Virus record (IMG/VR): IMGVR_UViG_3300026097_000876
Span: 186,001 to 250,000 of that record
Length of the DNA stretch: 64,000 nt
Direction: 5' to 3' (one strand)
Notes under the pieces: model-generated
Seen by the model: the letters and a program-made list of their open reading frames with translations, nothing else
Database searches by the model: none
What the model was told of the DNA's origin: nothing
Part shown: positions 35,528 through 52,114 of the stretch, in pieces
How the letters are laid out: each line of letters opens with the position of its first letter
Numbering within the stretch: the first letter of the stretch is position 1
Translations under genes and position numbers: made by a program

Positions 35528-36426
35528 AATTAAAAATTGCAGAACAAGACATTATCTATTTGTCGTACGACGAACCAAATGCAGAAAAAAATTATGCAGA
35601 CTTGTTATCTAAGGTTCCGTGGGCAAAACGAATTCACGGAGTCAAAGGTTCAGATGCGGCACATAAAGCCTGTGCAGAAATTAGCGAAACTGACAGATTT
35701 ATTACTGTAGACGGTGATAATATTGTTGATCAAAAATTTTTAGATCAAGTCATTGATTTAGATCAACATACTGATTTAAAGAAAAGTGTTATTAGCTGGT
35801 GCGGGCGTAATGTTATTAATGGACTTGTATACGGCAACGGTGGACTTAAATGTTGGCCTAAAGATTATGTTTTAAATATGCGTACACACGAAGCAGCAGA
35901 TCCTAACGATATTAATGCACAAGTTGAATTTTGTTGGGATGCAGAATACATTCAAATGTCTGACTGTTATAGCACAGTACACAACAATGCAAGTCCAAAA
36001 CAAGCGTGGCGAGCAGGTTTTCGTGAAGGTGTAAAACTTGCATTAGACCGAGGCGTAAAAGTAGACAAAGAATTATTTTTACAAAGCCATGAAAAAAATT
36101 TACATATGTTATATATTTGGCTTATGGTAGGATATGATGTTCCGAACGGGCATTTTTCAGTGTATGGTGCCAGAGAAGGACTTATGATGACTATGCTAAG
36201 TGATTGGGATTATGTTCAGGTCCGTGACTTTGATTATTTAGATAGTCATTGGGAGGGTATTAGTAGCATGCCTATGGATGTTCTTTATAGTGAAATTAAT
36301 AATAACGGATTTATGTTAAGAGATGAGTTAGGTATTCCGATTGCACCTGAACCATTATCAGAAGATCAGAGTGAATTTTTTAAAGCAGTTCACCACAGCT
36401 TCGGAAGAGGTAAACATCTTAAATGA
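35524..36426 (+). CDS. Glycosyltransferase-like protein (GT-A, DxD)
   Basis: Start reassigned to TTG 35524 after AAGGAG. Motifs LSYDEPNA, RIHGVKGSDAAH, FITVDGD, AWRAGFREGVKL. Confidence 0.65.
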   Translation: MKLKIAEQDIIYLSYDEPNAEKNYADLLSKVPWAKRIHGVKGSDAAHKACAEISETDRFITVDGDNIVDQKFLDQVIDLDQHTDLKKSVISWCGRNVINGLVYGNGGLKCWPKDYVLNMRTHEAADPNDINAQVEFCWDAEYIQMSDCYSTVHNNASPKQAWRAGFREGVKLALDRGVKVDKELFLQSHEKNLHMLYIWLMVGYDVPNGHFSVYGAREGLMMTMLSDWDYVQVRDFDYLDSHWEGISSMPMDVLYSEINNNGFMLRDELGIPIAPEPLSEDQSEFFKAVHHSFGRGKHLK

Positions 36427-37757
36427 ATAAAAATGAAGTAAAACAAAAATTAGATTCGGTTGGTTGCGGATTTTGTCTAGCTAAATGGACGCAAGTTACA
36501 ATTCATCTTGGATCCGGAATCAATCATAGTTGTCATCATGTCAGAGCACATGCAATTCCATTAAAAGATCTTGCTGACAATCCTAATGTTTTACACAACA
36601 CAGGATTCAAAAAGAATACCAGAAAGCAAATGCTAAACAACGAACGTCCTGATGAATGTGACTATTGTTGGAGAATCGAAGATAATACAGATAAACTTAG
36701 TGACAGAGTATTAAAAAGTGCAGATTCCTGGTCTTGGCCTGAATACGATATAATTAGTAAATCTTCAGGAGACGAGGATGTTTATCCTAAATATGTAGAA
36801 GTCAGTTTTAGTAATGTGTGTAATTTTAAATGTGGGTATTGCGGACCTGCATTTAGCAGCAAGTGGGCTGAAGAAATTAATCAACATGGTCCGTACACAT
36901 TTGATAAAACTAATTGGAAATATAATTTGATTGACGAATATCAACAACAAATTCCTACTAGAGAACATAATCCTTATATTGAAGCATTTTGGAAATGGTT
37001 TCCGGAAGCTGTTGAACACATGCATACCTTTCGAATTACAGGTGGAGAACCATTACTAAGTAAACATACTGACAAAGTTTTACAACATTTATTAGAAAAC
37101 CCCCAACCAGAATTAGAATTTAGTATTAATACTAATGCATGTCCCCCGAATAATTTGTGGAAAGAATTTACTAAAAAAATAAAAGTTTTAGAAGAAAAAA
37201 ACTGTATTAAAAGATTTGTATTATTTGTAAGTGCAGAAGCCAAAGGAAAACAACAAGAATATAACAGACACGGAATGAATTGGCAATTGTTTGTAGATAA
37301 TGTAGAATACTTTCTTGAAAATACTAATGGGCGGCTTAGTTTTATGAGTGCATTTAATATTTTAAGTGTACCAACATTTTTGCCTTTTTTAAAATATGTA
37401 TCTAGTCTCAAAGGAAGATTTGATAATGATGTAAATATTGATATTCCATATGTAAGAAATCCTCATTTTCTAGATTGTATGATTGCAACTGAAGAACTTG
37501 TACAAACATATTTACATCCTTGTCTTAAATTTATGCAAGAAAAAAACTTTGAAGCGTTTGAGATACAAAAATTTGAAAGAATTCTCGAAGATTTAGATGG
37601 TCGTTTTAAAAATCCAGATAAATTTAAACAAATATCAAATGAAGGACGAAGAATGTTTTACGACTGGATTAGAGAACACGATAAGCGTCGAGGAACAAAT
37701 TTTGAAAAAACTTTTCCAGAACTGATAACATTTTATAGAGATTGCTTGTATGTATGA
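36423..37757 (+). CDS. Radical SAM protein with N-terminal Twitch/SPASM-like domain
   Basis: CNFKCGYC motif and TGGEP; N-terminal CLAKW...SCHH...ECDYCW auxiliary cysteines. Confidence 0.85.
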   Translation: MNKNEVKQKLDSVGCGFCLAKWTQVTIHLGSGINHSCHHVRAHAIPLKDLADNPNVLHNTGFKKNTRKQMLNNERPDECDYCWRIEDNTDKLSDRVLKSADSWSWPEYDIISKSSGDEDVYPKYVEVSFSNVCNFKCGYCGPAFSSKWAEEINQHGPYTFDKTNWKYNLIDEYQQQIPTREHNPYIEAFWKWFPEAVEHMHTFRITGGEPLLSKHTDKVLQHLLENPQPELEFSINTNACPPNNLWKEFTKKIKVLEEKNCIKRFVLFVSAEAKGKQQEYNRHGMNWQLFVDNVEYFLENTNGRLSFMSAFNILSVPTFLPFLKYVSSLKGRFDNDVNIDIPYVRNPHFLDCMIATEELVQTYLHPCLKFMQEKNFEAFEIQKFERILEDLDGRFKNPDKFKQISNEGRRMFYDWIREHDKRRGTNFEKTFPELITFYRDCLYV

Positions 37758-38433: not shown

Positions 38434-39277
38434 TATCGTTGTTACAAGTAAACCAGTAGATGGACTTCTTTATTATAGTTACGAATACTGTGATATGCTT
38501 AACAAAGCAGGCTATCCTGCTAAGGTTGTTATTATATGTCACCAAAAATTTAGTGTACTAGATTATATGGAAGTCCTAACCACCAAATACACATATGTAG
38601 ATAATGTTGTGTATAACAATTTAAATGTAGGCAATGACGATGTAACACTTGTTATGGGCAGGAGTATGATTACACTGTCTTGGATCAATTACAACGATTA
38701 TACAGAAGAACAAAAACAAACACTGCATAGTGTATTTGCTAATAAAGTAATAAGTGTGTATTCAGAAAATCATCCTGCACAATATCCGCAGGCAGTAGAG
38801 TTTTATAGCCCTAAACAAATTGTAGACCTATGCGACACTGAAGTGTATCCTAATGGCGTAGGAGAACACTTTGAAAAAACAATTAATTTTAGTATATATA
38901 AACCGCACACAGACAACATACAATTTAAACATTTATTTCTAGGAACAAACGACAAATACTACGCAACAGTAGAAAAGGTAATTGACCAATTTCCTGATCA
39001 CGGGATCTTGACATATGACGAAAAGTATGTTAATATTAAAAATAATAACGTATTTGCACCTGTAGGAAATCTAATGGGCATGTTCGAAACATATGTTTAC
39101 ACAAAAGAAACATTTGATCCGGCTCCTAGAATCTTTCAAGAGTGCAAATATTATGGAAAGGATGTGATTTACTTGAGAGACAAAAACATACAAGACGGCG
39201 GCAGTGTGTACTGGAAACGAGATCTAAAAGAACCAGATGTAACAGCAATCATAAATGCTATAAAGGAATTTAAATGA
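38426..39277 (+). CDS. Hypothetical protein (possibly GT-B-like)
   Basis: 283 aa; DPAPRIFQECKYYGK weakly resembles GT-B C-terminal motifs. Confidence 0.45.
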   Translation: MINIVVTSKPVDGLLYYSYEYCDMLNKAGYPAKVVIICHQKFSVLDYMEVLTTKYTYVDNVVYNNLNVGNDDVTLVMGRSMITLSWINYNDYTEEQKQTLHSVFANKVISVYSENHPAQYPQAVEFYSPKQIVDLCDTEVYPNGVGEHFEKTINFSIYKPHTDNIQFKHLFLGTNDKYYATVEKVIDQFPDHGILTYDEKYVNIKNNNVFAPVGNLMGMFETYVYTKETFDPAPRIFQECKYYGKDVIYLRDKNIQDGGSVYWKRDLKEPDVTAIINAIKEFK

Positions 39278-39633
39278 AAATTGATCCAAAATGTCTAAAA
39301 TTTAATACCCCAAAAAATAAAGGTGCGGCATATACTTCTGATGGATTTATGCTGCCCTGCTGTTGGATAGACGATCCGCCAGTTTATAGATATCTTGTAG
39401 AAATGGGTATGAAAGATCCGGAATTAGCATTAGAAAATAACGATTGCTTAGAAGACATTTTTACATCAGATCAATGGGAGAACTTCTTCCAAAAATTATA
39501 CGATGATCCTGATCGGTGTTCATATATGTGTAAGAAAAAATGCGGCGTTGAACTTACCGACGGCGAAACTGAAATTCGTAAAGTAGAAGAAAGACTAGAG
39601 GTTTTAAAACAAAGTGAAGGAAAGAATTACTGA
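39274..39633 (+). CDS. Stand-alone Twitch/SPASM-like Fe-S protein
   Basis: PKC...GFMLPCCW...CSYMCKKKC cysteine pattern; no radical SAM core. Confidence 0.65.
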   Translation: MKIDPKCLKFNTPKNKGAAYTSDGFMLPCCWIDDPPVYRYLVEMGMKDPELALENNDCLEDIFTSDQWENFFQKLYDDPDRCSYMCKKKCGVELTDGETEIRKVEERLEVLKQSEGKNY

Positions 39634-40357
39634 TACCTATGTAAAATATCAGAAAAATTGCAGGATTAATGTCGATACCTCGCATCGTTGTCCCTTTCGG
39701 TGCCCTCAGTGCGTGAGACAAAAGACAATAAGCCAAGATATGATACGTAGAAGTTTTGATTTGGAAGAACATAACTTTCAAAAAATATTAGATTATTACG
39801 ATAATGGTCCTACATTTTGTGGACAAATTTCTGACCCTATCTATCATCCTAGATTTTTAAATTTTTTAAAAATGTGCAATGGACGAAATAGAGCTGTTCG
39901 TATTGCCACAGTAGGTAGTGGTAAAAGCGACGAGTGGTGGGACGAGGCTTATAGCTATGGTCTTGGAGAAAATCAGTGGACTTTCGGAGTAGACGGTATA
40001 GACGAAAAGAGCGAACTGTATCGCGTTGGTAGTAATTTCAAAGATCAATGGCGTCGAATGCAACAGGGTAGAGATCTAGGACATGTAATTGTTTGGCAGT
40101 ATATTATATTTGGTTATAATGAACACGAAATAGATCAGGCAGTAGAAATTGCAAAGAAAGAAGATTTTACTCTGCTTTTTGTTAACACAAACAGGGGATT
40201 TAATCCAGAAAGTGATACCCTGAGAAAGAATGTTAATTTTAAAATAAACAGTCCCGATCCAAAGCATCTTACTGATCGTCTTAAGAAAGAATGGTATGCT
40301 CATACCACAGATGTATTTCAGGCCTGGCGTGATCTTCCTCCTTGGAGTCCGAAATGA
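39614..40357 (+). CDS. Radical SAM protein (core only)
   Basis: CPFRCPQC; FCGQISDPIYHP; FGVDG; WQYIIFGYNEH. Confidence 0.85.
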   Translation: MKERITDTYVKYQKNCRINVDTSHRCPFRCPQCVRQKTISQDMIRRSFDLEEHNFQKILDYYDNGPTFCGQISDPIYHPRFLNFLKMCNGRNRAVRIATVGSGKSDEWWDEAYSYGLGENQWTFGVDGIDEKSELYRVGSNFKDQWRRMQQGRDLGHVIVWQYIIFGYNEHEIDQAVEIAKKEDFTLLFVNTNRGFNPESDTLRKNVNFKINSPDPKHLTDRLKKEWYAHTTDVFQAWRDLPPWSPK

Positions 40358-40923
40358 AAAGTAAAAAGAATAGCCTAGTTAAATGTGAGCATTATCCAAC
40401 ATTATTTTATGATACGCAATCTGATACTTTTGTAAAGTATTATAGTGATCGAGCTCCTTTTGAAAAATGGTGGAGTGTTTATAGAGAGTATCAAAATTTT
40501 GAACATAGAACTGTGCAGGTTTTAGACGTAAATTTCAAAAAGAAATACTTTGTAATGGAGTCAATAAAAGGTATTAATCTTGAGCACGAGATGATTAAAC
40601 TAGATTTTGAGGATACAAAGAAAGTTCTGACACAGACTTTAGAAATTTTTAGTAATAAATTTAGTTTTGCATGCGAAGCTATGCATGACACAGAGATATT
40701 TTTCCATAAAGACTTTCGAACTGAAAATCTCATGTTTGACGAAAATAAAAATGTGAGACTAGTAGACCCTGATAGTTTCAGTGTTTTGCCACTTGATAGA
40801 ATGAATAATTTATTGTTTTTTGGAAGGTACATGGATACTCTTACATCCATTCGAGAACGCCTTAGTTTTGCAGAGCTTACCGAAGAGCAAAAATATCGAT
40901 TAGGAAGAGGATATTTATACTAA
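40354..40923 (+). CDS. Small protein-kinase-fold phosphotransferase (Kdo/RIO/APH-like)
   Basis: FVMESIKG, HKDFRTENLMFD (HxDxxxxN catalytic loop), VRLVDPD; ATG start at 40354 preferred. Confidence 0.65.
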   Translation: MKSKKNSLVKCEHYPTLFYDTQSDTFVKYYSDRAPFEKWWSVYREYQNFEHRTVQVLDVNFKKKYFVMESIKGINLEHEMIKLDFEDTKKVLTQTLEIFSNKFSFACEAMHDTEIFFHKDFRTENLMFDENKNVRLVDPDSFSVLPLDRMNNLLFFGRYMDTLTSIRERLSFAELTEEQKYRLGRGYLY

Positions 40924-41996
40924 TGATTTCTTATGACGGCTGGGATAAGGAGTATCAAGAAAATCGAGAAGAATACTTGGAAGTGTTTGATCGTTTTATG
41001 AGTCAAATGAATTACGAAAATAATGAAGACTGGGAGCGTAGTTTTGCAGAACGTGTAGGTCGTAAACATTGTGTTAGTGTTGCTAGTGCCACAGATGCAC
41101 TACACTTTACGCTATTAGCACACGGTATTGGTACAGACGACGAAGTACTAGTAACAGACTTTAGTTGGATTAGTAGTTCAGCTTGCGTAAGTATGGTAGG
41201 TGCCACTCCAGTATTTTGCGACATTGACTTAGATACATATCATATGAGCTTAGACAGCATACAGCGCATGTACAGCAGTAAGACTAAGGCAATTGTATAT
41301 GTACACCTATTTGGTAACATGACTGACACAAGCGCAATACAAGCGTTCTGTGCAGAAAAAAATATACTGTTTATCGAAGATGCTGCACAGAGTTTAGGTA
41401 GTAGTCTCAACGGTGTTAGAGCAGGCACTATTGGCGATTGCAGTGTGTACAGTTTTAACTCAAACAAAGTTATTGCAGGCATCAACGGCGGCGGCGTTGT
41501 GTTAACCGACAACGAAGATATTGCAAAACGTGTAAAGCAGATTCGCAGACACGGCAAAGACAAAACATTCGACACGCTAGGCTACAACAGTCGCATGTAT
41601 GTGCTTAATGCAGAAATTATTAATCTGCGATTACAACGTGCAGAAGAAAATCAATCAAAGCGTCAAGATATTGCAAAACGTTACAACGAAGCATTTGCAG
41701 AGTTGTCTGTAGTAACACAAGCAATGTCAAACGGATTAAATCACAACTATCACAAATACGTAGTAAGATTCAAAGACAAGGACACTAGAAAGCGTGTTAA
41801 AGACGCCTTAAATGCTAGTATACACTACGAGACTCCGTTGAGTGCTAACGGTATGTACGACACACTACAGTGCAGGAGAGACGCTTGTACAGCGTCTGTG
41901 ACGGCATCTAATACTGTTTTATCGTTGCCGATACACGCTTGGTTAACTGAGGATGAAATAAGTAATATTATCAAACTAGTTAAGGATAACATATGA
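40923..41996 (+). CDS. DegT/DnrJ/EryC1/StrS family PLP-dependent aminotransferase
   Basis: SATDAL, GATPVFCDID, VHLFG, IEDAAQS, SFNSNK (PLP lysine), GGGVV, GYNSRM, LSLPIH. Confidence 0.93.
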   Translation: MISYDGWDKEYQENREEYLEVFDRFMSQMNYENNEDWERSFAERVGRKHCVSVASATDALHFTLLAHGIGTDDEVLVTDFSWISSSACVSMVGATPVFCDIDLDTYHMSLDSIQRMYSSKTKAIVYVHLFGNMTDTSAIQAFCAEKNILFIEDAAQSLGSSLNGVRAGTIGDCSVYSFNSNKVIAGINGGGVVLTDNEDIAKRVKQIRRHGKDKTFDTLGYNSRMYVLNAEIINLRLQRAEENQSKRQDIAKRYNEAFAELSVVTQAMSNGLNHNYHKYVVRFKDKDTRKRVKDALNASIHYETPLSANGMYDTLQCRRDACTASVTASNTVLSLPIHAWLTEDEISNIIKLVKDNI

Positions 41997-42712
41997 TAGA
42001 AGAATTATTTGGTAAAAGAAAACATGTTGTACATTATGATACAGAAATTATTCCTACACGATCCGAAGTAGAAGAAATACTAAGAGTAGGGTATTCTCTA
42101 GCAACATCCAAACAGAAGGCTTATGCCTATAAGTTTTGGATATTAGGACCAAATAAAGAACGCAGTCACATGTTATGGGAAATGGCTGAAGGTAGGAAAA
42201 TTGATGTGGATTACGAAGCATACGGTACTACTACAAAAGATAAAAAATATGTTGCTAATCCCGCTTTGTTCCATCTAAAAAGTTCTCCGTGGACTTTTTT
42301 GGTTACTCCGAGAACTTCGTCCCCTAATCCGCATTTTAAGTATGCATTTGAAACTGCTGGCAGTAAATGGCAGTTAGAAGACAGGGACTTTGTTAATACA
42401 AAAAACAGAGAATCAAATGCCATAGATGTAGGAATGGTGGCAAAAACAATCAGCGGAGCCGCATTTGAAAAAGGTTGGGATGTATCATACAATATCTGTT
42501 TTGAAAACGACAAAACAAAATGGCCAAAGTGTCTTCCATTCATTAGTGACCATGCTACAGGTTTTAGGCCTGTAATGATGATGACCTTAGGAAAAGGAAA
42601 AAAATATTATTATGAAAGATTGATTAGTGACGGCACAATCGCAAATGATCCTAAATATAATGCAGATCCTCCTTTTGAAACTATTTTCGAATTTTTTGAC
42701 GAGAACAAATGA
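41993..42712 (+). CDS. Nitroreductase-fold protein 1
   Basis: KRKHVVHYD, ATSKQKAYAYKFWILGP, IDVGM, MTLGKG. Confidence 0.65.
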   Translation: MIEELFGKRKHVVHYDTEIIPTRSEVEEILRVGYSLATSKQKAYAYKFWILGPNKERSHMLWEMAEGRKIDVDYEAYGTTTKDKKYVANPALFHLKSSPWTFLVTPRTSSPNPHFKYAFETAGSKWQLEDRDFVNTKNRESNAIDVGMVAKTISGAAFEKGWDVSYNICFENDKTKWPKCLPFISDHATGFRPVMMMTLGKGKKYYYERLISDGTIANDPKYNADPPFETIFEFFDENK

Positions 42713-43398
42713 TGGAAAATTATAAGTATGTTTTAGAGTATGATAATTCTGCATTTATTGATCCTACTCATATTGATAATGCATTAGAATATGCTTGGAA
42801 GGTAACTCCGTCAAAACAAAATTTTATGCCTTATAAGGTGCATGTTCTCTCACCCGAAGCTGAAGGGCATAAACAAATTTTATACAACAAAGCACTCATT
42901 CAACAAGCGCGAGGATCAGGAATTAAGATAAAAAATTCTAAAGCCTTGCAAAAATATGATCAGCGATTAAAGAATGATGACATGCAACCTTTTTTTCGTA
43001 ATTTAAAAACAGCTCCGTATGTTTTTATATTTGCACAGCGGGTTGAAGACGAACCTAATCCATTCCAGCAACATAATATCAATTATGGATTAACATATTG
43101 TCAAACAGAGAATAGCGACCCCGGACATGCACACGGTAAAGATATTGCAAGAATTGAAATAGGCATGTTCAGTGCAAATCTTGCATCGCATTTGTTAACT
43201 AATAAGATAGATGTTTCTTTTACACAGTGTTTTCCTGGTGAGCTTGACACTTGGACTGAAAAAGAATTTAAATTTTTAAAAGATGACGTTCTTTTAATTA
43301 TGACGGCAGGCAAAGGCAAAATATATAGAAGAGATCTTAAATCACAAGAAAAAGATCTAAAACCAAATTTTAAAAGAATAGTAAACAAGGAAGTATAA
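42709..43398 (+). CDS. Nitroreductase-fold protein 2
   Basis: AWKVTPSKQNFMPYKVHVL, TAPYVFIF, IEIGMFSANL, MTAGKG. Confidence 0.7.
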   Translation: MMENYKYVLEYDNSAFIDPTHIDNALEYAWKVTPSKQNFMPYKVHVLSPEAEGHKQILYNKALIQQARGSGIKIKNSKALQKYDQRLKNDDMQPFFRNLKTAPYVFIFAQRVEDEPNPFQQHNINYGLTYCQTENSDPGHAHGKDIARIEIGMFSANLASHLLTNKIDVSFTQCFPGELDTWTEKEFKFLKDDVLLIMTAGKGKIYRRDLKSQEKDLKPNFKRIVNKEV

Positions 43399-44078
43399 TG
43401 ATTAAAAAGATTTTAGACAAATGGAAATATGTTCTTGCATTCGATACTGAACACAGAACAGACAAAACTGTTATTAAAGACATAATGCATACAGCTTGGC
43501 AGACAACGCCGAGCAAAAACAGTTTCATGCCTTATAGAGTTCATGTATTTGGCCCAGGAGAAGAAAAGTCAAAAAGAATAATATATGAAACAAGTGCCGC
43601 AAAAGAGAAAAATTCAAACAGCAGAAATTCGAACCCCGATCAATGGGAAGTTAATTCAAATAAAGCAAGTTTATTAACAGCTGAATATATCCTGGTATTC
43701 ACTCCGAGAGCAGAAGATAATCCTAGTCCTTGGCAAATTCATCTACACAACGGCGGGTGCTACATGGATGCATGGTACGAAGACAAATTAAAAAAATATA
43801 GGGCAACAATTTTAGTAGAAGTTGGGTTATTTGCACAAGCAGTCTCTACATTGTGTTTAGAACAAGGTCTGCATACTAACTACATTTCATCATTTGAATC
43901 AGATTTAGAATACTGGAAAGATCTTGACTTTATAAAGCATCCACCTTGTCTAATTATGGGAATAGGTAAGGCTAAGTATTTTCGTAGAGAATGGATGAAA
44001 AAAATCGGATGGGACGAAGGTGATCATAAACCGAGCTTCAGCAGTGTAGTTAATTTCCATGGAATTGATACCGAATGA
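43398..44078 (+). CDS. Nitroreductase-fold protein 3
   Basis: AWQTTPSKNSFMPYRVHVFGP, VEVGLFAQAV...GLHTNYI, MGIGK. Confidence 0.7.
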   Translation: MIKKILDKWKYVLAFDTEHRTDKTVIKDIMHTAWQTTPSKNSFMPYRVHVFGPGEEKSKRIIYETSAAKEKNSNSRNSNPDQWEVNSNKASLLTAEYILVFTPRAEDNPSPWQIHLHNGGCYMDAWYEDKLKKYRATILVEVGLFAQAVSTLCLEQGLHTNYISSFESDLEYWKDLDFIKHPPCLIMGIGKAKYFRREWMKKIGWDEGDHKPSFSSVVNFHGIDTE

Positions 44079-44713
44079 TGTCAACCGATCAAATGGAAAA
44101 TAATTTTTTTAACCGAACTGAAGTAAATGTGGATATTGCATATAGATGTGCTCTTGACTGTCCGAGATGTCAACGTTGGAGGGTCTATAGAAAGCATAAC
44201 AAGAAAGTTCCAGGTTATGACATGACCATGACTGAGTTTAAAAGAATTGTCTCACACTTTACTGAAGTTAGTTTTTGCGGACAGTATTCTGATCCAATTC
44301 ATCATCCGAAATTTATTGATTTTCTAAAACTATGCAAGGATAAAGGTATAAAAGCATCTGTGCATAATGCATCATCTGCTAAATCAGAAGATTGGTATAT
44401 TCAAGCATTTAAAGCAAATCCCAATGCTCAATGGTTTTTTGGAATAGACGGGTTGCCTCATCAGAGCCATCAGTATAGAATTAATCAAGATGGCGTAAAA
44501 CTTTATAATATTATGCTAGAAGCAAAAAAGTATTTAAAAACAAAACCAATATGGCAGTACATCATTTTTAATTACAATGAAAATCATGTCGAAGAAGCTA
44601 AAAAAATGGCTGACGACGACGACGTCTATTTTATGTTAGTAAGATCTTCTAGGTGGGACCGAGACGATCCATTAATGCCTACTCTTAAAGAATATAAGTT
44701 AAATAGATTATGA
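44075..44713 (+). CDS. Radical SAM protein (core only), paralogue of 39614
   Basis: CALDCPRC; FCGQYSDPIHHP; FGIDG; WQYIIFNYNENH. Confidence 0.85.
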   Translation: MMSTDQMENNFFNRTEVNVDIAYRCALDCPRCQRWRVYRKHNKKVPGYDMTMTEFKRIVSHFTEVSFCGQYSDPIHHPKFIDFLKLCKDKGIKASVHNASSAKSEDWYIQAFKANPNAQWFFGIDGLPHQSHQYRINQDGVKLYNIMLEAKKYLKTKPIWQYIIFNYNENHVEEAKKMADDDDVYFMLVRSSRWDRDDPLMPTLKEYKLNRL

Positions 44714-45045
44714 CTGTAGAATTAAAACCAAAATGTTTTGAAGATCAGCAGATGGCTGTAACTAATAGAGGTCATTTAATACCTTGTTGTTATTGCGATA
44801 CTCAGCATACTATGAATGATTTAGAATTTCAAAAACTATTGAAAGTTAGCAAAATAAGCGACTATAACAGTATAGAAGAAATTTTGAATACAAACGAATG
44901 GAAAGAGTTTTATAAAAATCTGCAACAAAATATTGGGCCTCGTGCTTGTCAGACTGTCTGTGCTAAAAATAAAAAAGACCCGTTAAATATTAAAGAAATA
45001 GAAGACGGTCGAACAGGAAAAATTATACATACTAGAATTGCATAG
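44710..45045 (+). CDS. Stand-alone Twitch/SPASM-like Fe-S protein, paralogue of 39274
   Basis: PKC...GHLIPCCYCD...ACQTVC. Confidence 0.65.
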   Translation: MTVELKPKCFEDQQMAVTNRGHLIPCCYCDTQHTMNDLEFQKLLKVSKISDYNSIEEILNTNEWKEFYKNLQQNIGPRACQTVCAKNKKDPLNIKEIEDGRTGKIIHTRIA

Positions 45046-45064
45046 CAACATATGGAAGATTAAA

Positions 45065-45736
45065 ATGTTAGAAGAGTTAATGCTGAAAAGGCAACAAGTA
45101 AGATTTTTTGATAGAGAAAACTATCCTAGCGAAAAAATAATTTACTCAATCTTAGAAAAAACTTATCAAATAGTTCCATCTAAACAAAATTTAGTGCCTT
45201 ACAAAGTCCATGTGTTAGGTCCAAGCATGGAAGAACATAAAAGAGAGTTATATCTTTTATCTTCTAAACAACAGCTAGGTGACAAGTTAAATTATAACGA
45301 ACTTGCCAAACGTAATAGCGGAAATACACAGTTGTTGGCTCCTTATGTTCTACTTTTTGAAAAAAGATTACCAGAACCTAACGATTTTGTAAAAAAAGAA
45401 ATGCTCCTAGGACATAAATTTAATGAATGTTTGCCCGAACAACAAAGAAATCAAAGGATAGCTACAGCTATCGAGGTGGGTATGTTTACAGCAATGCTAT
45501 CTGGGTTTTGTATGGAGGAAGATATTTCTCTAAGTTATATAGGATGCCTTCCTGGAAACCCAGAAACCTACAAAAATAATCCTTCTGTCAATTTTGATTT
45601 TATCGAACAACACATTTTTTTAGGGATAGGCATAGGTTACCAAGACTATTCTATCGAAGAAAATCTTAGATTATCTCGTTTACAAAATTGTGGAGAGATA
45701 AAACCTAAAAGTGATAATGTAATTGTTAAACATTAA
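45065..45736 (+). CDS. Nitroreductase-fold protein 4
   Basis: KRQQVRFFD, VPSKQNLVPYKVHVLGP, IEVGMF, GIGIGY; ATG 45065 preferred over TTG 45038. Confidence 0.7.
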   Translation: MLEELMLKRQQVRFFDRENYPSEKIIYSILEKTYQIVPSKQNLVPYKVHVLGPSMEEHKRELYLLSSKQQLGDKLNYNELAKRNSGNTQLLAPYVLLFEKRLPEPNDFVKKEMLLGHKFNECLPEQQRNQRIATAIEVGMFTAMLSGFCMEEDISLSYIGCLPGNPETYKNNPSVNFDFIEQHIFLGIGIGYQDYSIEENLRLSRLQNCGEIKPKSDNVIVKH

Positions 45737-45741
45737 TGGTG

Positions 45742-45770
45742 TTGACAATTCATATTAATTAGTGTATAAT
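45742..45770 (+). promoter_or_regulatory. Sigma70-type promoter
   Basis: TTGACA-17 bp-TATAAT, perfect consensus, upstream of AGGA and ATG 45799. Confidence 0.85.
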
Positions 45771-45798: not shown

Positions 45799-46635
45799 AT
45801 GTTTCTAACCCTTGAAGATTTAAAAGGTTCAGAATATCGTACAGTAGACTTTTATATGACAAAAAGTTGTAATAAGAGTTGCCATTATTGTACTGCATGG
45901 ACTCTTGAAATGCGTAATCTTGATGTTGACATGGATTTTTTGCGTACTATTTTAGAAGGTCTTGCTCCTTATAAAACACGTATTTGTTTGCTCGGCGGTG
46001 AACCTGGACTTGTTAAGAACTTAAGAGAAGTTATTGCCGAAATTAAAAAGTATCCCAATCTAGTAGTACAGGTACTTTCTAACAGTCTTATACGTAAATT
46101 TTATCCAGAAGTATTAGAAGATCCTGAGATTATTTACATCGAACATTTAGTGTTGGACTTTTACGAAGATCGAATTGAAAAGTTAGGTAACTATGATTTC
46201 TTTGAACCTAATGATCTAAACAATTATAATCTTATAATTGAAACACCTGGATACTTTGATTACAGAGACAAACATGATTTGTCTTATCTTATGCACAAAA
46301 ATACAGAATTTAAAGAATATAATTCACGCTCTCCGGATTTCTTTTCAGATCATAAAATTGTACAAGCGCCAGAAATTGAAAGACGAGTATGTGCTAAGTT
46401 TCCGCAAGTTCCTGTGTTTGATTTTGAAATACAAAAAATTAGACATTGTAGCAGGAAAGTTATTAACGGTAGCCGTCAATTTGATGTTACTAAAGAAAAT
46501 ATTGAAAAGATGATGAACTACGAACTTTTTGAATTCGAAAACTATTGCAAAGGTTGTATGGATATTATTCCTCCGAGGCCAGTAGCACGTAGATTAGAAA
46601 TATTAGAAAAAATAGCATTAGAAGATATCACATGA
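45799..46635 (+). CDS. Radical SAM protein with C-terminal auxiliary cysteines
   Basis: CNKSCHYC, LGGEPG; C-terminal C...HC...CKGC. Confidence 0.85.
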   Translation: MFLTLEDLKGSEYRTVDFYMTKSCNKSCHYCTAWTLEMRNLDVDMDFLRTILEGLAPYKTRICLLGGEPGLVKNLREVIAEIKKYPNLVVQVLSNSLIRKFYPEVLEDPEIIYIEHLVLDFYEDRIEKLGNYDFFEPNDLNNYNLIIETPGYFDYRDKHDLSYLMHKNTEFKEYNSRSPDFFSDHKIVQAPEIERRVCAKFPQVPVFDFEIQKIRHCSRKVINGSRQFDVTKENIEKMMNYELFEFENYCKGCMDIIPPRPVARRLEILEKIALEDIT

Positions 46636-48095
46636 AGTTTTATGCAGTAGCCTTAAATATGCACGATCATAATACATATGACGGTGTAACACACTATCAA
46701 CTAGAAAGACACACCCGTGCTAAACATAATCTAAATTATAAAAATGTTCATGATCCAGAACCGAGTAAACGTTTTTTTGATAATTTTGTAAAGACTAATG
46801 ATAAAGTACTTTGCTTTACTGTTTCTAATCTAGGACAAGAATTTGTATTAGACCGGATTGAAAAAAAATTCGGAAAAGACTTTTTAAACTTCAGACCTAG
46901 CCATATCTGGGATTGTTATCATACCGATGATTTTTATTATATCGATCATCATCAAAGTCATGCTACCTATGCTCTTCTAAGTTCAGGATTTCCGGAAAGT
47001 GACATTCTTGCTATCGACGGCAGAGGTTGGCAATTTAATTGTATTTTTGTTAACAAAGAAGGAAGAATAAAAGATCTTACAGATGAATTATCTATTGGCG
47101 GACTTTGGAATAGGCTATCGCAAGATCTTGGTTTTGGATATTTAGGCGCAGGTAAAGTAATGGGTCTTGCTGGTTACGGTAAGTATGATCATAGGGTTCA
47201 CGCTATGTTAGAAGTATATCTCACTAATGATAATAACCTTCCTAACTGGTATAAAAAAATTATCGACAGCTGCAACAAAGAAGATATTGCTTTTACTCTA
47301 CAATATGTTACAGAAGAATTAATTAAAAAATATGTATATCCTCTCAAAACTAGTGACAATTTGTGTGTAGCAGGCGGAGTAGCATATAATGGCTACATGA
47401 ATGAGGAATTTACTAAACATTATAAAAACGTACATGTACCGCCTGCTGTTGGTGACGAAGGTCAGGCAATAGGTACTTACATGCATGCCGAATATGTAGT
47501 AAACGGAAATGTACACATTCCTTGTGTATACTCTGGTGTTGAACATAAGTACACACTACCAGATACATTTGAAGATTTGAATATCCCTAAACTGGCACAA
47601 CAAATAGCAGATGGCAAAATAGTAGGATGGTTCCAAGGAAAGAGTGAAAGTGGTAATAGAGCACTAGGCAATCGTAGTATACTTGCAGATCCACGCAATC
47701 CCGATATTAAAGATATTATTAACAGTAAGATTAAACTACGTGAAGACTTTAGACCGTTTGCTCCTAGCGTACTAGAAGAACATTATACAGAATATTTTGA
47801 TACTAATCAGCCATCGCCTTATATGAGCAGGATTGTAAAAGTTAAAGGTAACATCATACCGGGCGTAACTCACGTAGACAGTACAGCAAGGATTCAAACT
47901 GTTAATAAAACACAGAATCAAAAATTTTATGATTTAATTAACGAATTTTATAAAATTACAGGAGTTCCTATGTTACTTAACACAAGTTTTAACTGTCAAG
48001 AACCTATTGTAGAAACTCCGCACGAAGCATATGAAACTTATAACAAAACTTCTTTGGATATTCTTGTTATTAATGATAAAGTGATTGAAAAATGA
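46632..48095 (+). CDS. Carbamoyltransferase (NodU/CmcH/TobZ family)
   Basis: HHQSHA, IDGRG, GKVMGLAGYG, AGGVAYN, GDEGQAIG, RALGNRSILADP, REDFRPFAPS, HVDSTARIQTV, LLNTSFN. Confidence 0.95.
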   Translation: MKFYAVALNMHDHNTYDGVTHYQLERHTRAKHNLNYKNVHDPEPSKRFFDNFVKTNDKVLCFTVSNLGQEFVLDRIEKKFGKDFLNFRPSHIWDCYHTDDFYYIDHHQSHATYALLSSGFPESDILAIDGRGWQFNCIFVNKEGRIKDLTDELSIGGLWNRLSQDLGFGYLGAGKVMGLAGYGKYDHRVHAMLEVYLTNDNNLPNWYKKIIDSCNKEDIAFTLQYVTEELIKKYVYPLKTSDNLCVAGGVAYNGYMNEEFTKHYKNVHVPPAVGDEGQAIGTYMHAEYVVNGNVHIPCVYSGVEHKYTLPDTFEDLNIPKLAQQIADGKIVGWFQGKSESGNRALGNRSILADPRNPDIKDIINSKIKLREDFRPFAPSVLEEHYTEYFDTNQPSPYMSRIVKVKGNIIPGVTHVDSTARIQTVNKTQNQKFYDLINEFYKITGVPMLLNTSFNCQEPIVETPHEAYETYNKTSLDILVINDKVIEK

Positions 48096-48697
48096 TAGAC
48101 GAAATTATTTTTAGAAATGTACTAAAAGAAATTAAACAAAATTCAGAATATGCTGACGATATTATTGATTCATTCAGTGACAATCAGTTTATTGCTAAAC
48201 GCAAAGTTTTAGAATATGCTAATAGATTAAATATACTAGATAAAGATTCAGAAGTAATTATTTTTGGATCTTGGTACGGAAGTATTTTAATTCCTGGATT
48301 AGTTGATAAAGTAAAAAAAATTAGTTGTATTGATATTGACAAACGAGTTTTACAAACTGCAAAAAATAGATTCTTCAAAGATTATACCAATATAGATTAT
48401 ATTGCAGGCAACGTATTTGATTTAGATCTCAAAAGATATCACACGGCTAATCTTTTTATAAACACGTCGTGCGAACATATGCCGTCGATGAAGGAATTTT
48501 TATACTGGCCTGACCAAACCCATTTTGTCTTCACAAGTAATGATATGTTCAACATCGAAGGACACATAAATTGTGTAAACAGTTTAGATGAATTTAAAGA
48601 ACAATTGCCCGAACGTGCAGAAGTATTGTATGAAGAAGAAGTAGAGGATACCAGAGGCACACGTTATATACTAGTCGGAAAAATTAACGGTATTTAA
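48092..48697 (+). CDS. Class I SAM-dependent methyltransferase-like protein
   Basis: IFGSWYG glycine loop, CIDID, INTSCEHM. Confidence 0.65.
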   Translation: MIDEIIFRNVLKEIKQNSEYADDIIDSFSDNQFIAKRKVLEYANRLNILDKDSEVIIFGSWYGSILIPGLVDKVKKISCIDIDKRVLQTAKNRFFKDYTNIDYIAGNVFDLDLKRYHTANLFINTSCEHMPSMKEFLYWPDQTHFVFTSNDMFNIEGHINCVNSLDEFKEQLPERAEVLYEEEVEDTRGTRYILVGKINGI

Positions 48698-51375: not shown

Positions 51376-52114
51376 AAGTTCGATTTACCCTTCCTAAGTA
51401 TATGAGAACAGCATATACTATAGTAGTTATCACACTTACTGATAAGACACTTGGACTAATGATGTCAGTAACATAACTCCACATAATAATTGGAAGAGTT
51501 TGAGTACTATGATCTAATAACAACAACGCTACAATAAACTCGTCAAAACTAGTAATAAACGCAAGAGAACATCCTGCAAGCAATCCGGGCAACATAACTG
51601 GAAGTTGTATATCTTTTAATATTTGAAAACTATTTGCACCGCATAGTCTAGCACTTTTTGCAATATTTTCATCATAGTTATTTAGACTACTTAGCGTCAT
51701 TAAAATTACATAAGGAACACATAAAACAGTATGTGCTATAATAAGATTGATAAAACTGTTAGTAAACCCTATATCATTAAAAAAGAAAATCCAGCCAAGG
51801 CCAATAATGATACTCGGTATTACAATAGGACTGATTATTACACTTAGAACTATTCCGTTTCTATATTGGTTCAACCACAACGCCGCAGGAACAGATAGTA
51901 GTATACAACTAATAACAGTATATGCTCCTACTTGAAAACTAGTTACAATACTTTTATACCACATAGGATCTGTAAATAATTGGTTATACCATTTCAAGCT
52001 GAACTCAAAATCAGAAATTTTAAAATAGTTTCCACCGTCAACGCTAAACAAAATAATAACCAACATAGGCATTAACAAATATAAGAACATGCCATAAGCA
52101 AATAATCTAAGCAC
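51368..52114 (-). CDS. potC: Polyamine ABC transporter permease (PotC-like)
   Basis: FSLKWY, EAA-like loop (KSARLCGAN), AFITSFDEF, TLPIIMW; GTG start at 52114 after AGGAG. Confidence 0.85.
   Translation of the reverse strand: MLRLFAYGMFLYLLMPMLVIILFSVDGGNYFKISDFEFSLKWYNQLFTDPMWYKSIVTSFQVGAYTVISCILLSVPAALWLNQYRNGIVLSVIISPIVIPSIIIGLGWIFFFNDIGFTNSFINLIIAHTVLCVPYVILMTLSSLNNYDENIAKSARLCGANSFQILKDIQLPVMLPGLLAGCSLAFITSFDEFIVALLLLDHSTQTLPIIMWSYVTDIISPSVLSVSVITTIVYAVLIYLGRVNRTYE

What the first reader, a model, noticed from the sequence alone, without database searches (positions are those of the whole stretch)
41993..45736. Four divergent nitroreductase-fold paralogues interleaved with split radical SAM genes
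Seen: a shared (T/V)PSK(Q/N)xxxPY(K/R)VHV(L/F)GP and (I/V)E(V/I)G(M/L)F pattern in four genes, three of them tandem. The N-terminal Arg-rich FMN-phosphate motif (R-x-S-x-R) is best kept in copy 4 (KRQQVR) and eroded in copies 2 and 3 (NYKYVL, KWKYVL). Known: this fold includes flavin reductases, BluB, azole oxidases and hetero-oligomeric cyclodipeptide oxidases. Inference: a hetero-oligomeric flavoenzyme, or dedicated electron donors for the neighbouring Fe-S enzymes.
Basis: partly seen in the sequence, partly recalled or inferred. Interest (0 to 1): 0.65.

Follow-up and report, generated by a model that had tools for sequence, protein, structure and literature searches.

The report
Phage-only nitroreductase-fold genes beside radical-SAM cassettes
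Four old, divergent copies of a virus-only branch of the nitroreductase flavoprotein family sit among split radical-SAM genes in the tail-fibre island of a marine T4-like phage; they are real and uncharacterised, probably helper redox proteins for the phage's iron enzymes, but that function is inferred and untested.

Summary
Four co-directional ORFs (41993-42712, 42709-43398, 43398-44078, 45038-45736) are mutually homologous at 23-33% identity (blastp E 1e-11 to 1e-32). A split radical-SAM core and twitch pair lies between copies 3 and 4.

A 100-sequence family profile hits only nitroreductase-superfamily structures (3gag, E 6e-8). The AlphaFold model of copy 3 (pLDDT 93.6) matches only that fold (Z 15-17), with no preference for a known subgroup.

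The copies are not recent tandem duplicates. Each has its own orthologues in other phage contigs, and loci carry one to four copies.

No member was found outside phage or uncultured (mostly marine) metagenome sequence. One cultured phage, Pelagibacter phage Mosig, has one.

Of 100 distinct family genes, 88 lie within two genes of a radical-SAM or twitch gene (69), a ribonucleotide reductase gene (19) or an IscA-type Fe-S carrier (6). Only 49% of related radical-SAM loci carry one.

Best reading, confidence about 0.36: facultative, probably homodimeric NAD(P)H/flavin reductase modules serving phage iron enzymes. The main rival is pathway-tailoring oxidoreductases. An obligate hetero-oligomer is disfavoured because the copy combinations vary between loci. 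Flavin binding is untested, and the canonical FMN-phosphate motif is altered.

The parts
41993..42712 (+). NR1, 239 aa. Clade A of the viral nitroreductase-fold family.
   Evidence: Pfam PF00881 E 2e-3, below threshold. Blastp to NR2-4 gives E 1e-11 to 1e-12. Orthologues at 66-77% identity occur in L007-L014, L030 and L049. It has R-x-H-x-V in place of R-x-S-x-R and lacks the C-terminal Lys before the conserved Pro.
42709..43398 (+). NR2, 229 aa. Clade C.
   Evidence: No Pfam hit. Blastp to NR3 gives E 1e-32. It has its own 7-member orthologue clade with 99% support. The first Arg of the N-terminal motif is Tyr; the C-terminal K-P is kept. It overlaps NR1 by 4 nt.
43398..44078 (+). NR3, 226 aa. 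Clade C.
   Evidence: Pfam PF00881 E 1.3e-5, above threshold. AF2 model pLDDT 93.6, pTM 0.89. Foldseek and VIA match only nitroreductase-superfamily chains: 3gbh E 1.9e-10, Z 17.1. The nearest orthologue is L055:3581-4252 at 51%.
44075..44713 (+). rsB, 212 aa. Radical-SAM core half of a split enzyme, with CxxxCxxC at C25/C29/C32.
   Evidence: Pfam Radical_SAM E 1.3e-3; PHROG 21308 E 8e-13; NCBIfam W_rSAM_matur E 5e-8. It is a paralogue of rsA, E 2e-34. A naturally fused core+twitch form exists at L015:7916-8890.
44710..45045 (+). twB, 111 aa. Cys-rich twitch/SPASM half of the split radical-SAM enzyme.
   Evidence: Pfam SPASM E 3.3e-5, above threshold. NCBIfam N_Twi_rSAM positions 11-73, E 4e-4. 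A twitch ORF is adjacent to the core in 75 of 77 independently fetched loci.
45038..45736 (+). NR4, 232 aa from the TTG start; more likely 223 aa from the ATG at 45065. Clade B, on a long branch.
   Evidence: No Pfam hit. Blastp to NR3 gives E 6e-22. It keeps R-x-Q-x-R and the C-terminal K-P, so it is the most canonical FMN-phosphate site of the four. Start codon context.
45742..45770 (+). Perfect sigma-70 consensus (TTGACA, 17 nt, TATAAT) in the only real gap of the gene row, between NR4 and rsC.
   Evidence: The only 12-of-12 site in 33-49 kb. This is a consensus match only; function is not shown.
45799..46635 (+). rsC, 278 aa. Radical-SAM enzyme with four further conserved C-terminal Cys residues. 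It is the conserved 'core' radical-SAM gene of the cluster.
   Evidence: Pfam Radical_SAM E 2e-7. C24/C28/C31 and C198/C217/C250/C253 are invariant in 31 sequences. It is next to an NR gene in most loci.
46632..48697 (+). NodU/CmcH-type carbamoyltransferase (46632-48095) and a methyltransferase-like gene (48092-48697).
   Evidence: Pfam Carbam_trans_C E 7e-67 and Carbam_trans_N E 3e-20; Methyltransf_25 E 5e-3 is weak. The pair is conserved in the cluster across loci.
40342..41996 (+). Kinase-like gene (40342-40923) and a DegT/DnrJ/EryC1 sugar aminotransferase gene (40923-41996), directly upstream of NR1.
   Evidence: Pfam DegT E 1.7e-86. Pkinase E 3e-5 is below threshold.
39274..40357 (+). Second split radical-SAM enzyme, in the opposite gene order: twitch half twA (39274-39633), then core rsA (39614-40357).
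   Evidence: Pfam Radical_SAM E 5e-6; PHROG 21308 E 3e-18. twA versus twB gives E 5e-5 and rsA versus rsB gives E 2e-34. Both gene orders are common: 25 twitch-first and 21 core-first.
36423..37757 (+). Unsplit radical-SAM enzyme with an N-terminal twitch domain, 444 aa.
   Evidence: NCBIfam NF033640 N_Twi_rSAM, E 2.6e-92, 310 bits against a cut-off of 170.

Best explanation
The four genes encode four anciently diverged members of a branch of the nitroreductase (NTR) flavoprotein superfamily that has so far been found only in viruses and metagenomes. Copy 1 belongs to clade A, copies 2 and 3 to clade C, and copy 4 to clade B. They sit in the host-recognition (tail-fibre) island of a T4-like marine myovirus whose nearest cultured relative is Pelagibacter phage Mosig.

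They are optional components of the mobile radical-SAM cassettes of that island. Those cassettes consist of split or unsplit twitch-type radical-SAM enzymes joined to a conserved set of DegT aminotransferase, radical-SAM, carbamoyltransferase and methyltransferase genes.

Shown here: the homology, the fold, the age of the paralogues, the virus-and-metagenome-only distribution, and the gene neighbourhoods.

Inferred: each is most likely a dimeric NAD(P)H-dependent flavin oxidoreductase that supplies reducing equivalents to the phage's iron-dependent enzymes, either as reduced flavin or by direct contact. Candidate uses are reduction of the [4Fe-4S] clusters of the neighbouring radical-SAM enzymes and, in other phages, assembly or repair of the di-iron centre of RNR beta. 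That role would resemble Fre in E. coli RNR activation or the NTR-fold flavin reductases that feed luciferase. The proteins probably act as separate homodimers, possibly each specialised for its own partner, rather than as one obligatory hetero-oligomer.
For: Fold and family:
- Profile A2 versus PDB gives 18 hits, all nitroreductase-superfamily chains, best E 6e-8 and full length.
- The AF2 model has pLDDT 93.6. Foldseek probability is 1.00 and VIA Z is 15-17.
- Residues matching the canonical flavin-contacting P-S-x-x-N motif are kept: S39 is invariant and K40 nearly so. R104, N110, E141, G143 and G190 are also conserved across 100 sequences.

Old paralogues: each copy has its own orthologue clade.

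Distribution:
- 195 relatives in IMG/VR.
- 499 clusters at E<=1e-3 among 1.84 billion representatives.
- The nearest ESM-Atlas clusters by sequence features are 100% viral.
- No match in a motif scan of GTDB species genomes.
- Mosig is the only one of 50,697 phage records with a member.

Association with iron enzymes in separate settings:
- 88 of 100 distinct NR genes lie within two non-NR genes of a radical-SAM/twitch gene (69), an RNR gene (19) or an IscA gene (6).
- The order nrdA-NR-nrdB-NR occurs in 11 loci and nrdA-nrdB-NR in about 9 more, roughly 20 in all.
- A compact NR-IscA-NR-rSAM-twitch module is inserted in a baseplate region. Related modules occur in L032-L036.

This phage:
- In the 261.8-kb contig carrying the same island, all six radical-SAM genes and all four NR genes lie within 21 kb.
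- No flavodoxin, 2Fe-2S ferredoxin or IscA gene was found in that contig.

Fusions: some family members are fused to a phycobiliprotein-like, tetrapyrrole-binding-type domain. That fits a reductase module paired with a cofactor-binding partner.
Against: - The NTR fold normally performs two-electron hydride chemistry. For NfsA no FMN semiquinone is formed (abstract of PMC11049802, listed). Direct one-electron delivery to a [4Fe-4S] cluster would therefore be unusual.
- The canonical FMN-phosphate motif R-x-S-x-R is altered in the whole family. The Ser is His, Gln or Tyr. The first Arg is lost in NR2 and NR3. The C-terminal Lys is lost in NR1. The equivalent NfsB residues K205 and R207 contact the FMN phosphate (PMC10051150). 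Flavin binding is therefore not assured.
- Only 38 of 77 loci fetched through the radical-SAM core have an NR gene within 6 kb.
- NR and radical-SAM copy numbers do not scale together (rho 0.20, p 0.13).
- Four deeply divergent paralogues kept side by side fit substrate-specific enzymes at least as well as generic reductases.
- The neighbourhood statistics come from loci selected for carrying an NR gene, and there is no background rate for comparison.
- No expression data exist.
Confidence: 0.36

Rival explanations
1. Pathway-tailoring oxidoreductases. Each paralogue would be a flavin-dependent dehydrogenase or reductase acting on a different intermediate of the island's product, which is an amino-, carbamoyl- and methyl-decorated sugar, nucleoside or peptide. 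Each would work in sequence with a radical-SAM step, much as SagB/McbC, AlbA, BluB, IYD or the enone reductase CLA-ER use this fold on specific substrates.
For: - The genes sit directly inside a biosynthetic-looking row: DegT (E 2e-86), carbamoyltransferase (E 7e-67), methyltransferase-like, kinase-like, and an ATP-grasp gene on the opposite strand.
- The paralogues are deeply divergent (23-33% identity), with clade-specific conserved residues. That is what substrate-specialised enzymes look like.
- Presence and number vary between loci, as tailoring steps do.
- Structural neighbours include substrate-specific members: CLA-ER Z 16.5, IYD 15.6, AlbA 15.3, BluB 15.2.
Against: - Members of the same clades also flank nrdA/nrdB in about 20 loci where no such pathway is present.
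- Members also occur in a minimal NR-IscA-NR-rSAM-twitch module outside the DegT cluster.
- No structural or sequence preference for any substrate-specific subgroup was seen.
Confidence: 0.3
2. A hetero-oligomeric flavoenzyme. Two or more of the paralogues would assemble into mixed dimers or larger assemblies whose non-equivalent interface sites divide the work, for example one site that binds flavin and one degenerate site.
For: - Start/stop overlaps link NR1-NR2 (4 nt), NR2-NR3 (1 nt) and NR3-rsB (4 nt), which suggests coupled translation.
- NTR active sites are built from both subunits of a dimer (PMC8668982).
- The copies have lost different parts of the FMN-phosphate site. NR2 and NR3 lack the first Arg, and NR1 lacks the C-terminal Lys.
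- Clade A is usually accompanied by a clade B or C gene.
Against: - No fixed pairing exists. The combinations seen are A+C+B, A+B, B+C, C+C, A+A, and single copies in apparently complete clusters (L017, L057, L076, L078) and in RNR-linked loci such as L060.
- The known hetero-oligomeric case, AlbA/AlbB, pairs an NTR subunit with a different small protein rather than with a paralogue (my own knowledge; the 8uc3 entry title is).
- Heterodimers were not tested computationally here.
Confidence: 0.15
3. Flavin-free derivatives of the fold. The proteins would have lost FMN binding and would serve as scaffolds, substrate carriers or recognition subunits for the radical-SAM enzymes, or would bind another cofactor such as a deazaflavin or a tetrapyrrole.
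For: - The canonical Ser of R-x-S-x-R is absent from all 100 sequences, and the flanking Arg residues are lost in several clades.
- Pfam fails on two of the four copies.
- Some relatives are fused to a phycobiliprotein-like domain.
- The same phage contig encodes heme oxygenase and a bilin reductase.
Against: - The residues that match the canonical ribityl/isoalloxazine-contacting motif (P-S-K-Q/N-N) are the best conserved positions of the family, together with R104, N110, E141 and G143. This argues for a retained ligand site of the flavin type.
- Lys and His residues at the altered positions could still bind a phosphate.
Confidence: 0.1

Closest known systems
NfsB / FRase I / Frp-type NAD(P)H:flavin oxidoreductases and 'hub' nitroreductases (for example 3gbh, 3gag, 3ge6, 1nox, 1vfr)
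   Same: They share the alpha+beta fold over the whole length (Z 15-17, TM 0.6-0.74). They share the P-S-x-x-N-x-x-P-(W/Y) motif, the helix motif (D/E)-x-G and the C-terminal G...(K/R)-P. Length is about 200-240 aa. Some of these enzymes supply reduced flavin to partner enzymes (my own knowledge).
   Different: Sequence identity is only 10-19%. The R-x-S-x-R phosphate motif is changed to R-x-H/Q/Y-x-hydrophobic (Arg only in clade B). The family is known only from viruses and metagenomes. It occurs in arrays of 1-4 paralogues next to radical-SAM, RNR and IscA genes.
Cyclodipeptide oxidase AlbA/AlbB (8uc3, 9exv) and SagB/McbC azoline dehydrogenases
   Same: They have the same fold (AlbA Z 15.3). 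They are encoded in natural-product clusters and act with partner proteins.
   Different: AlbA's partner is a small unrelated subunit, not a paralogue. No YcaO, cyclodehydratase or cyclodipeptide synthase gene was found among the cluster genes scanned. No preferential similarity was seen.
Fre with YfaE (E. coli RNR cofactor maintenance), and flavodoxin with flavodoxin reductase (radical-SAM activation)
   Same: They are the functional analogy for the proposed role: NAD(P)H-driven reduction of an iron cofactor of RNR beta or of a radical-SAM cluster. Relatives of the window's genes flank nrdA and nrdB.
   Different: They have different folds (FNR-like, ferredoxin, flavodoxin). The analogy rests on gene neighbourhood alone.
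'Radical SAM gene cassettes' of the pelagimyophage host recognition cluster (Zaragoza-Solas et al. 2020, PMC7029224)
   Same: They share the genomic setting: a hypervariable island with tail fibres, glycosyltransferase-like genes and variable radical-SAM cassettes in T4-like SAR11 phages. The Mosig phage has a syntenic cluster.
   Different: The paper does not mention nitroreductase-like genes, the split twitch architecture or the RNR/IscA association (0 occurrences of 'nitroreductase').
NCBIfam NF033640 radical-SAM proteins with an N-terminal twitch domain
   Same: The 444-aa gene at 36423-37757 is a member (310 bits against a cut-off of 170). The split pairs match parts of the same model.
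   Different: The split pairs are two separate genes, in both orders, and score far below the family cut-off.

Membership tests
Nitroreductase (NTR) superfamily, Pfam PF00881 | The NTR alpha+beta fold | tested here: met
   The NR3 model has pLDDT 93.6. All top Foldseek hits are NTR proteins (probability 1.00, E to 2e-10), and VIA Z reaches 17.1 over 186 residues. NR1, NR2 and NR4 are homologous to NR3 at E 2e-12 to 1e-32.
Nitroreductase (NTR) superfamily, Pfam PF00881 | Score above the Pfam gathering threshold (23.5 bits) | tested here: inconclusive
   NR3 scores 25.9 bits and passes. NR1 scores 18.7 bits and fails. NR2 and NR4 give no hit. The 100-sequence family profile does reach NTR structures at E 6e-8.
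Nitroreductase (NTR) superfamily, Pfam PF00881 | N-terminal R-x-S-x-R FMN-phosphate motif | tested here: not met
   The Ser position is His (clades A and C), Gln (clade B) or Tyr (NR2, NR3). The first Arg is lost in NR2 and NR3. The last Arg is kept only in clade B, which includes NR4.
Nitroreductase (NTR) superfamily, Pfam PF00881 | P-S-x-x-N flavin-contacting motif from the partner subunit, and the C-terminal (K/R)-P phosphate contact | tested here: met
   S39 is invariant and K40 is at least 90% conserved. The Asn is kept in clades B and C. K211-P212 is kept in NR2-4 but not in NR1. The role of the equivalent NfsB residues K205/R207 is taken from PMC10051150.
Nitroreductase (NTR) superfamily, Pfam PF00881 | Homodimer with two FMN at the subunit interface | not testable with these tools
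   No dimer model or flavin assay was possible.
Hetero-oligomeric NTR enzymes (cyclodipeptide oxidase type) | A fixed, co-inherited pair of subunits | tested here: not met
   Clade combinations vary between loci and single-copy loci exist.
Dedicated reductase partner of radical-SAM enzymes (functional class, not a sequence family) | Consistent co-location with radical-SAM genes | tested here: inconclusive
   69 of 100 distinct NR genes lie within two genes of a radical-SAM/twitch gene. Only 38 of 77 radical-SAM-centred loci hold an NR gene within 6 kb.
Dedicated reductase partner of radical-SAM enzymes (functional class, not a sequence family) | Physical or electron-transfer interaction with the radical-SAM protein | tested here: inconclusive
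   Complex prediction on NR4x2+FMN+rsC gave ipSAE 0.00 with the verdict 'no answer'. The tool states this is not evidence either way.
Subgroup-specific NTR enzymes (BluB, IYD, SagB/McbC, FbiB C-terminal domain) | Preferential sequence or structural similarity to one subgroup | tested here: not met
   Z scores of 15-17 are spread evenly over many subgroups. Profile hits are mostly uncharacterised structural-genomics entries. Subgroup signature residues were not checked one by one.

The most novel reading that the evidence does not exclude
Marine T4-like phages may carry a virus-specific family of nitroreductase-fold reductases that act as portable 'cofactor-activation' modules. These would keep phage-encoded metallo- and tetrapyrrole-dependent enzymes reduced inside streamlined, reductant-poor hosts such as SAR11. 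The targets would be radical-SAM [4Fe-4S] clusters, the di-iron centre of RNR beta, and a fused phycobiliprotein-like domain. The modules would stand in for flavodoxin or ferredoxin, with separate paralogues dedicated to separate partners.
Probability: 0.2. Interest if true: 0.75.

Novelty: new variant of a known kind. Interest (0 to 1): 0.5.

Why it matters
T4-like phages of SAR11 and their relatives are among the most abundant viruses in the ocean. Their tail-fibre island is the least understood part of their genomes.

This island holds six radical-SAM genes in 21 kb. Radical-SAM enzymes need a low-potential reductant, and no ferredoxin or flavodoxin gene was found in the 262-kb contig. If the nitroreductase-fold family supplies that reductant, it would be a new way for a virus to make oxygen- and iron-sensitive chemistry work in a minimal host. 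It would also extend the nitroreductase superfamily to a role in cofactor activation.

If the proteins are instead tailoring enzymes, they mark an unknown and widespread viral natural-product or glycan pathway.

Either way, the family is a defined, uncharacterised and experimentally tractable target. It comprises about 270 clusters (50% identity) at E<=1e-10 and was found only in viruses and metagenomes. Its link to RNR and IscA genes gives direct assays.

Tried and rejected
- Complex prediction with two copies of NR4, FMN and rsC as partner gave ipSAE 0.00 and the verdict 'no answer'. It is not evidence either way.
- The search for related loci with the 100-sequence alignment on genome contigs failed because no block was conserved enough.
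- The same scan with the four-copy alignment found 15 pattern matches, and none encodes a relative. This is a motif scan, not an exhaustive search.
- PHROGs gave nothing for any NR copy. NCBIfam gave nothing for the NR copies.
- The word-index protein search returned only 28 unnamed metagenome proteins.
- NR versus radical-SAM copy number per locus showed no significant correlation (rho 0.20, p 0.13). Many loci are truncated, so this is weak.
- Sequencing runs: only one DNA run holds the stretch. It is probably the source sample and is oddly labelled 'soil metagenome'. No RNA run holds it, so read laying was not used and expression is unknown.
- Four literature searches found no paper on such nitroreductase-like genes in pelagiphages, with radical-SAM and carbamoyltransferase genes in phages, with twitch-domain radical-SAM enzymes, or as an uncharacterised subgroup of the superfamily.
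- Recent tandem duplication was considered and rejected, because each copy has separate orthologues.
- Frameshift artefacts as the cause of the split radical-SAM genes were considered and rejected. There are 46 split pairs in both gene orders, and a twitch ORF is adjacent in 75 of 77 further loci.
- No alternative genetic code was needed.

Full report
**Setting**

The window is 64 kb of a 71,988-base IMG/VR virus record, with about 34% G+C. A 261.8-kb viral contig (L006/G001) carries the same island. All 25 predicted proteins compared between the window and the 20.7 kb fetched from that contig are 100% identical.

The upstream part of the window encodes structural genes:
- a gp5-like protein with a lysozyme-type domain;
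- a 4,986-aa ORF with an FG-GAP repeat;
- a tail-collar fibre and three further fibre-like ORFs.

The nearest record among 50,697 phage genomes is Pelagibacter phage Mosig, family Kyanoviridae. It has a syntenic gene set (nitroreductase-domain, radical-SAM, aminotransferase, carbamoyltransferase and methyltransferase genes) next to its tail fibres.

This region matches the 'host recognition cluster' described for pelagimyophages. That hypervariable island holds tail fibres, glycosyltransferases and variable 'radical SAM cassettes' (PMC7029224). The paper does not mention nitroreductase-like genes.

**Observation**

From 33.4 to 48.7 kb, co-directional genes abut or overlap. In order they are:
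- two putative glycosyltransferase-like ORFs and several unknown ORFs;
- a radical-SAM gene with an N-terminal twitch domain (NF033640, E 3e-92);
- a split twitch + radical-SAM pair;
- a kinase-like gene;
- a DegT aminotransferase gene;
- NR1, NR2 and NR3;
- a split radical-SAM core + twitch pair;
- NR4;
- a third small radical-SAM gene (rsC);
- a carbamoyltransferase gene and a methyltransferase-like gene.

The four NR proteins are homologous in every pairing (E 1e-11 to 1e-32, 23-33% identity). They are the only family members in the record and in the 262-kb contig.

Only one split radical-SAM pair is truly interleaved with the NR genes.

The gene split is real. Across related loci there are 46 split pairs in both gene orders, mostly overlapping, and one natural fusion at L015:7916-8890. 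A twitch ORF is adjacent to the core in 75 of 77 further loci fetched independently.

**Fold**

Pfam alone is marginal. A profile of 100 family sequences, however, matches 18 PDB sequences, all of them nitroreductase-superfamily chains. The best is 3gag at E 6e-8 over the full length.

The AlphaFold model of NR3 is confident (pLDDT 93.6, pTM 0.89). It matches only that fold: Foldseek probability 1.00, and VIA Z 17.1 to 3gbh. Z values of 15-16.5 go to CLA-ER, NfsA/B, NOX, IYD, FbiB-C, AlbA and BluB. There is no preference for a known subgroup.

**A distinct clade found only in viruses and metagenomes**

- IMG/VR holds at least 195 relatives.
- An exhaustive HMMER search of 1.84 billion representatives finds only 499 clusters at E<=1e-3, 272 at E<=1e-10 and 121 at E<=1e-30. 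The profile therefore does not reach the bulk of cellular nitroreductases.
- The nearest ESM-Atlas clusters by sequence features are 100% viral.
- The word-index search returned only unnamed metagenome proteins.
- A motif scan of GTDB species genomes found no relative.
- Among cultured phages, only Mosig has a member.

**Old paralogues, variable number**

In 79 related loci the family occurs once (28 loci), twice (39) or three times (12). Four copies occur only in this island, that is, in the window and its identical copy L006.

A maximum-likelihood tree separates three groups:
- clade A, containing NR1, with 100% support;
- a looser clade B, containing NR4 on a long branch;
- clade C, in which NR2 and NR3 each have their own orthologue group.

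The four copies are therefore not a recent tandem amplification. Combinations differ between loci (A+C+B, A+B, B+C, C+C, A+A, single copies). This argues against one obligatory hetero-oligomer.

**Cofactor site**

Positions were aligned to canonical enzymes through the profile.
- The partner-subunit motif P-S-x-x-N is the best conserved feature. S39 is invariant and K40 is at least 90% conserved.
- R104, N110, E141, G143 and G190 are also conserved.
- The N-terminal R-x-S-x-R motif is changed family-wide. The Ser is His in clades A and C and Gln in clade B. The last Arg survives only in clade B. NR2 and NR3 have also lost the first Arg.
- The C-terminal Lys-Pro corresponds to the K205/R207 region that contacts the FMN phosphate in NfsB (PMC10051150). 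It is kept in NR2-4 and lost in NR1 and much of clade A.

A flavin-type site is thus probably retained, but with a remodelled phosphate pocket. Binding was not tested.

**Neighbourhoods**

Of 100 distinct family genes, 88 lie within two non-family genes of a radical-SAM or twitch gene (69), a class I RNR gene (19) or an IscA/HesB Fe-S carrier gene (6). Three settings recur:
1. The cluster of DegT, radical-SAM, carbamoyltransferase and methyltransferase genes.
2. The order nrdA-NR(A)-nrdB-NR(C) or nrdA-nrdB-NR(C), in about 20 loci.
3. A compact NR-IscA-NR-rSAM-twitch module, once inserted in a T4-like baseplate region.

The common denominator is an iron cofactor that must be assembled or reduced, not a shared small-molecule pathway.

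In the 262-kb contig, all six radical-SAM genes lie within 21 kb together with the four NR genes. Two of these are B12-binding types at window 49921-51375 (-) and 56271-57743 (+). No flavodoxin, 2Fe-2S ferredoxin or IscA gene was detected in that contig.

Several points count against a tight coupling:
- Only 38 of 77 loci fetched through the radical-SAM core carry an NR gene within 6 kb.
- Copy numbers do not scale.
- The one complex prediction gave no answer.
- NTR enzymes are typically two-electron catalysts (abstract of PMC11049802, listed).

**Verdict**

The observation and the fold assignment are confirmed. The 'hetero-oligomer' reading is disfavoured.

The 'electron donor' reading is the best available unifying explanation, but it rests on neighbourhood alone (confidence about 0.36). 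The close rival is that these are substrate-specific tailoring oxidoreductases of an unknown viral pathway (about 0.30).

The finding is a new variant of a known kind: an uncharacterised branch of a well-known superfamily, known only from viruses and metagenomes, with an altered cofactor motif and an unusual association with radical-SAM, RNR and IscA genes.

**Side finding**

Longer members of the same family (350-430 aa) carry an N-terminal domain of about 125 aa.
- Its profile hits mainly phycocyanin and allophycocyanin chains, including the 24 best matches. The alignment falls on the bilin-attachment K-C-A-R-D motif, whose Cys and Arg are invariant in the 10-sequence alignment.
- Its AlphaFold model (pLDDT 92.5) matches only phycobiliproteins in the listed Foldseek hits, at TM 0.59-0.76 and weak E-values of about 1e-2.
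- One such gene sits directly upstream of an NR gene and an rsC-like radical-SAM gene.
- The window has no such domain.
- The 262-kb contig encodes heme oxygenase and a ferredoxin-dependent bilin reductase. The purpose of bilin synthesis in phages of non-phototrophic hosts is an open question (PMC11480375).

Noticed in passing
Proteins P0037, P0053, P0066, P0071, P0074, P0076, P0082, P0166, P0172, P0173 (alignment A5); locus L089:810-1862: Long members of the same viral NR family carry an N-terminal domain of about 125 aa that looks like a phycobiliprotein. The PDB profile hits are mainly phycocyanin/allophycocyanin chains, including the 24 best, aligned on the bilin-binding K-C-A-R-D motif, whose Cys and Arg are invariant in the 10-sequence alignment. 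The AF2 model has pLDDT 92.5, and all listed Foldseek hits are phycobiliproteins at TM 0.59-0.76 (E about 1e-2). In L089 the fusion gene sits upstream of an NR gene and an rsC-like radical-SAM gene. I found no description of a globin-like bilin-binding domain fused to a nitroreductase-fold domain in the papers searched.
   Followed up: partly
G001 (261.8-kb contig with the same island): 19015-19566 (-) and 19715-20275 (-): The phage carrying this island also encodes a ferredoxin-dependent bilin reductase (PF05996, E 1e-17) next to a heme oxygenase (PF01126, E 2e-19). No ferredoxin or flavodoxin gene was found in the contig.
   Followed up: partly
L031, L037-L046, L048, L052, L060-L063, L075, L077, L081, L084 (for example L044:3533-8873): In about 20 other phage loci, family members flank the class I ribonucleotide reductase genes (nrdA-NR-nrdB-NR or nrdA-nrdB-NR). 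In about 14 of these loci a conserved ORF of about 185 aa follows.
   Followed up: partly
L044:8319-8873, L060:10654-11202, L029:1676-2287 (family 'c8', 33 ORFs): A conserved 184-203-aa protein lies within two genes of an NR gene in 29 loci, usually directly downstream, in both the RNR and radical-SAM settings. It often overlaps the NR stop codon. Its motifs (D-F-E-G-H-P near the N terminus, G-G-T-N-T-S-G-C-V, M-C-A-D-Y) recall isochorismatase/cysteine-hydrolase enzymes. That resemblance is from memory only. Pfam and PHROGs give no hit, and it is absent from the window.
   Followed up: partly
L032-L036, L047; L087:8001-10782; L088: A compact module of NR, IscA/HesB Fe-S carrier (PF01521, E 1e-15), usually a second NR, radical-SAM core and twitch half. 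In L087 it is inserted between T4-like baseplate genes and followed by a cytidylyltransferase gene.
   Followed up: partly
window 49921-51375 (-) and 56271-57743 (+): Two cobalamin-binding (class B) radical-SAM genes (B12-binding plus Radical_SAM domains). They bring the island's total to six radical-SAM genes, in a phage whose nearest cultured relative infects SAR11.
   Followed up: no
window 51368-54842 (-): A complete phage-borne ABC importer: solute-binding protein (SBP_bac_8, E 3e-39), ATPase and two permeases. An ATP-grasp gene lies next to it at 48684-49931 (-).
   Followed up: no
window 45742-45770 (+): A perfect TTGACA-17-TATAAT consensus lies in the 62-nt gap between NR4 and rsC. It is the only 12-of-12 site in 16 kb. 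It suggests that rsC, the carbamoyltransferase gene and the methyltransferase gene can be transcribed separately from the NR block.
   Followed up: no
window 11045-26005 (+): A single 4,986-aa ORF with one FG-GAP repeat hit. It lies upstream of the tail fibres, where pelagimyophages are reported to carry VrlC. Homology to VrlC was not tested.
   Followed up: no
L025:1292-4128: A natural fusion (945 aa) of a radical-SAM enzyme of the N-terminal twitch type with the carbamoyltransferase. It suggests that the two act on the same substrate.
   Followed up: no
L057:174-1235, L076:7073-7981, L080:12287-13210 (family 'bigNR', 27 ORFs); Mosig_00093 may belong (membership not tested): A second, longer (300-353 aa) and very divergent nitroreductase-like family (Pfam E 1e-4). 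It often sits directly after the small NR genes and before rsC, so many loci carry four NR-type genes in a row. It is absent from the window.
   Followed up: no
window 59710-60705 (-) and 62257-63573 (-): A protein with an Mtd_N (major tropism determinant N-terminal) domain, and a DUF2201 metallopeptidase/VWA-like protein. No diversity-generating retroelement was looked for.
   Followed up: no
G000 and G001 record summaries: CheckV completeness is given as 14% for the 72-kb record and 73% for the 262-kb contig. Both imply a genome far larger than the 141-kb Mosig genome. A jumbo relative or an assembly artefact could explain this, and neither was examined. The only sequencing run holding the stretch is labelled 'soil metagenome'.
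   Followed up: no
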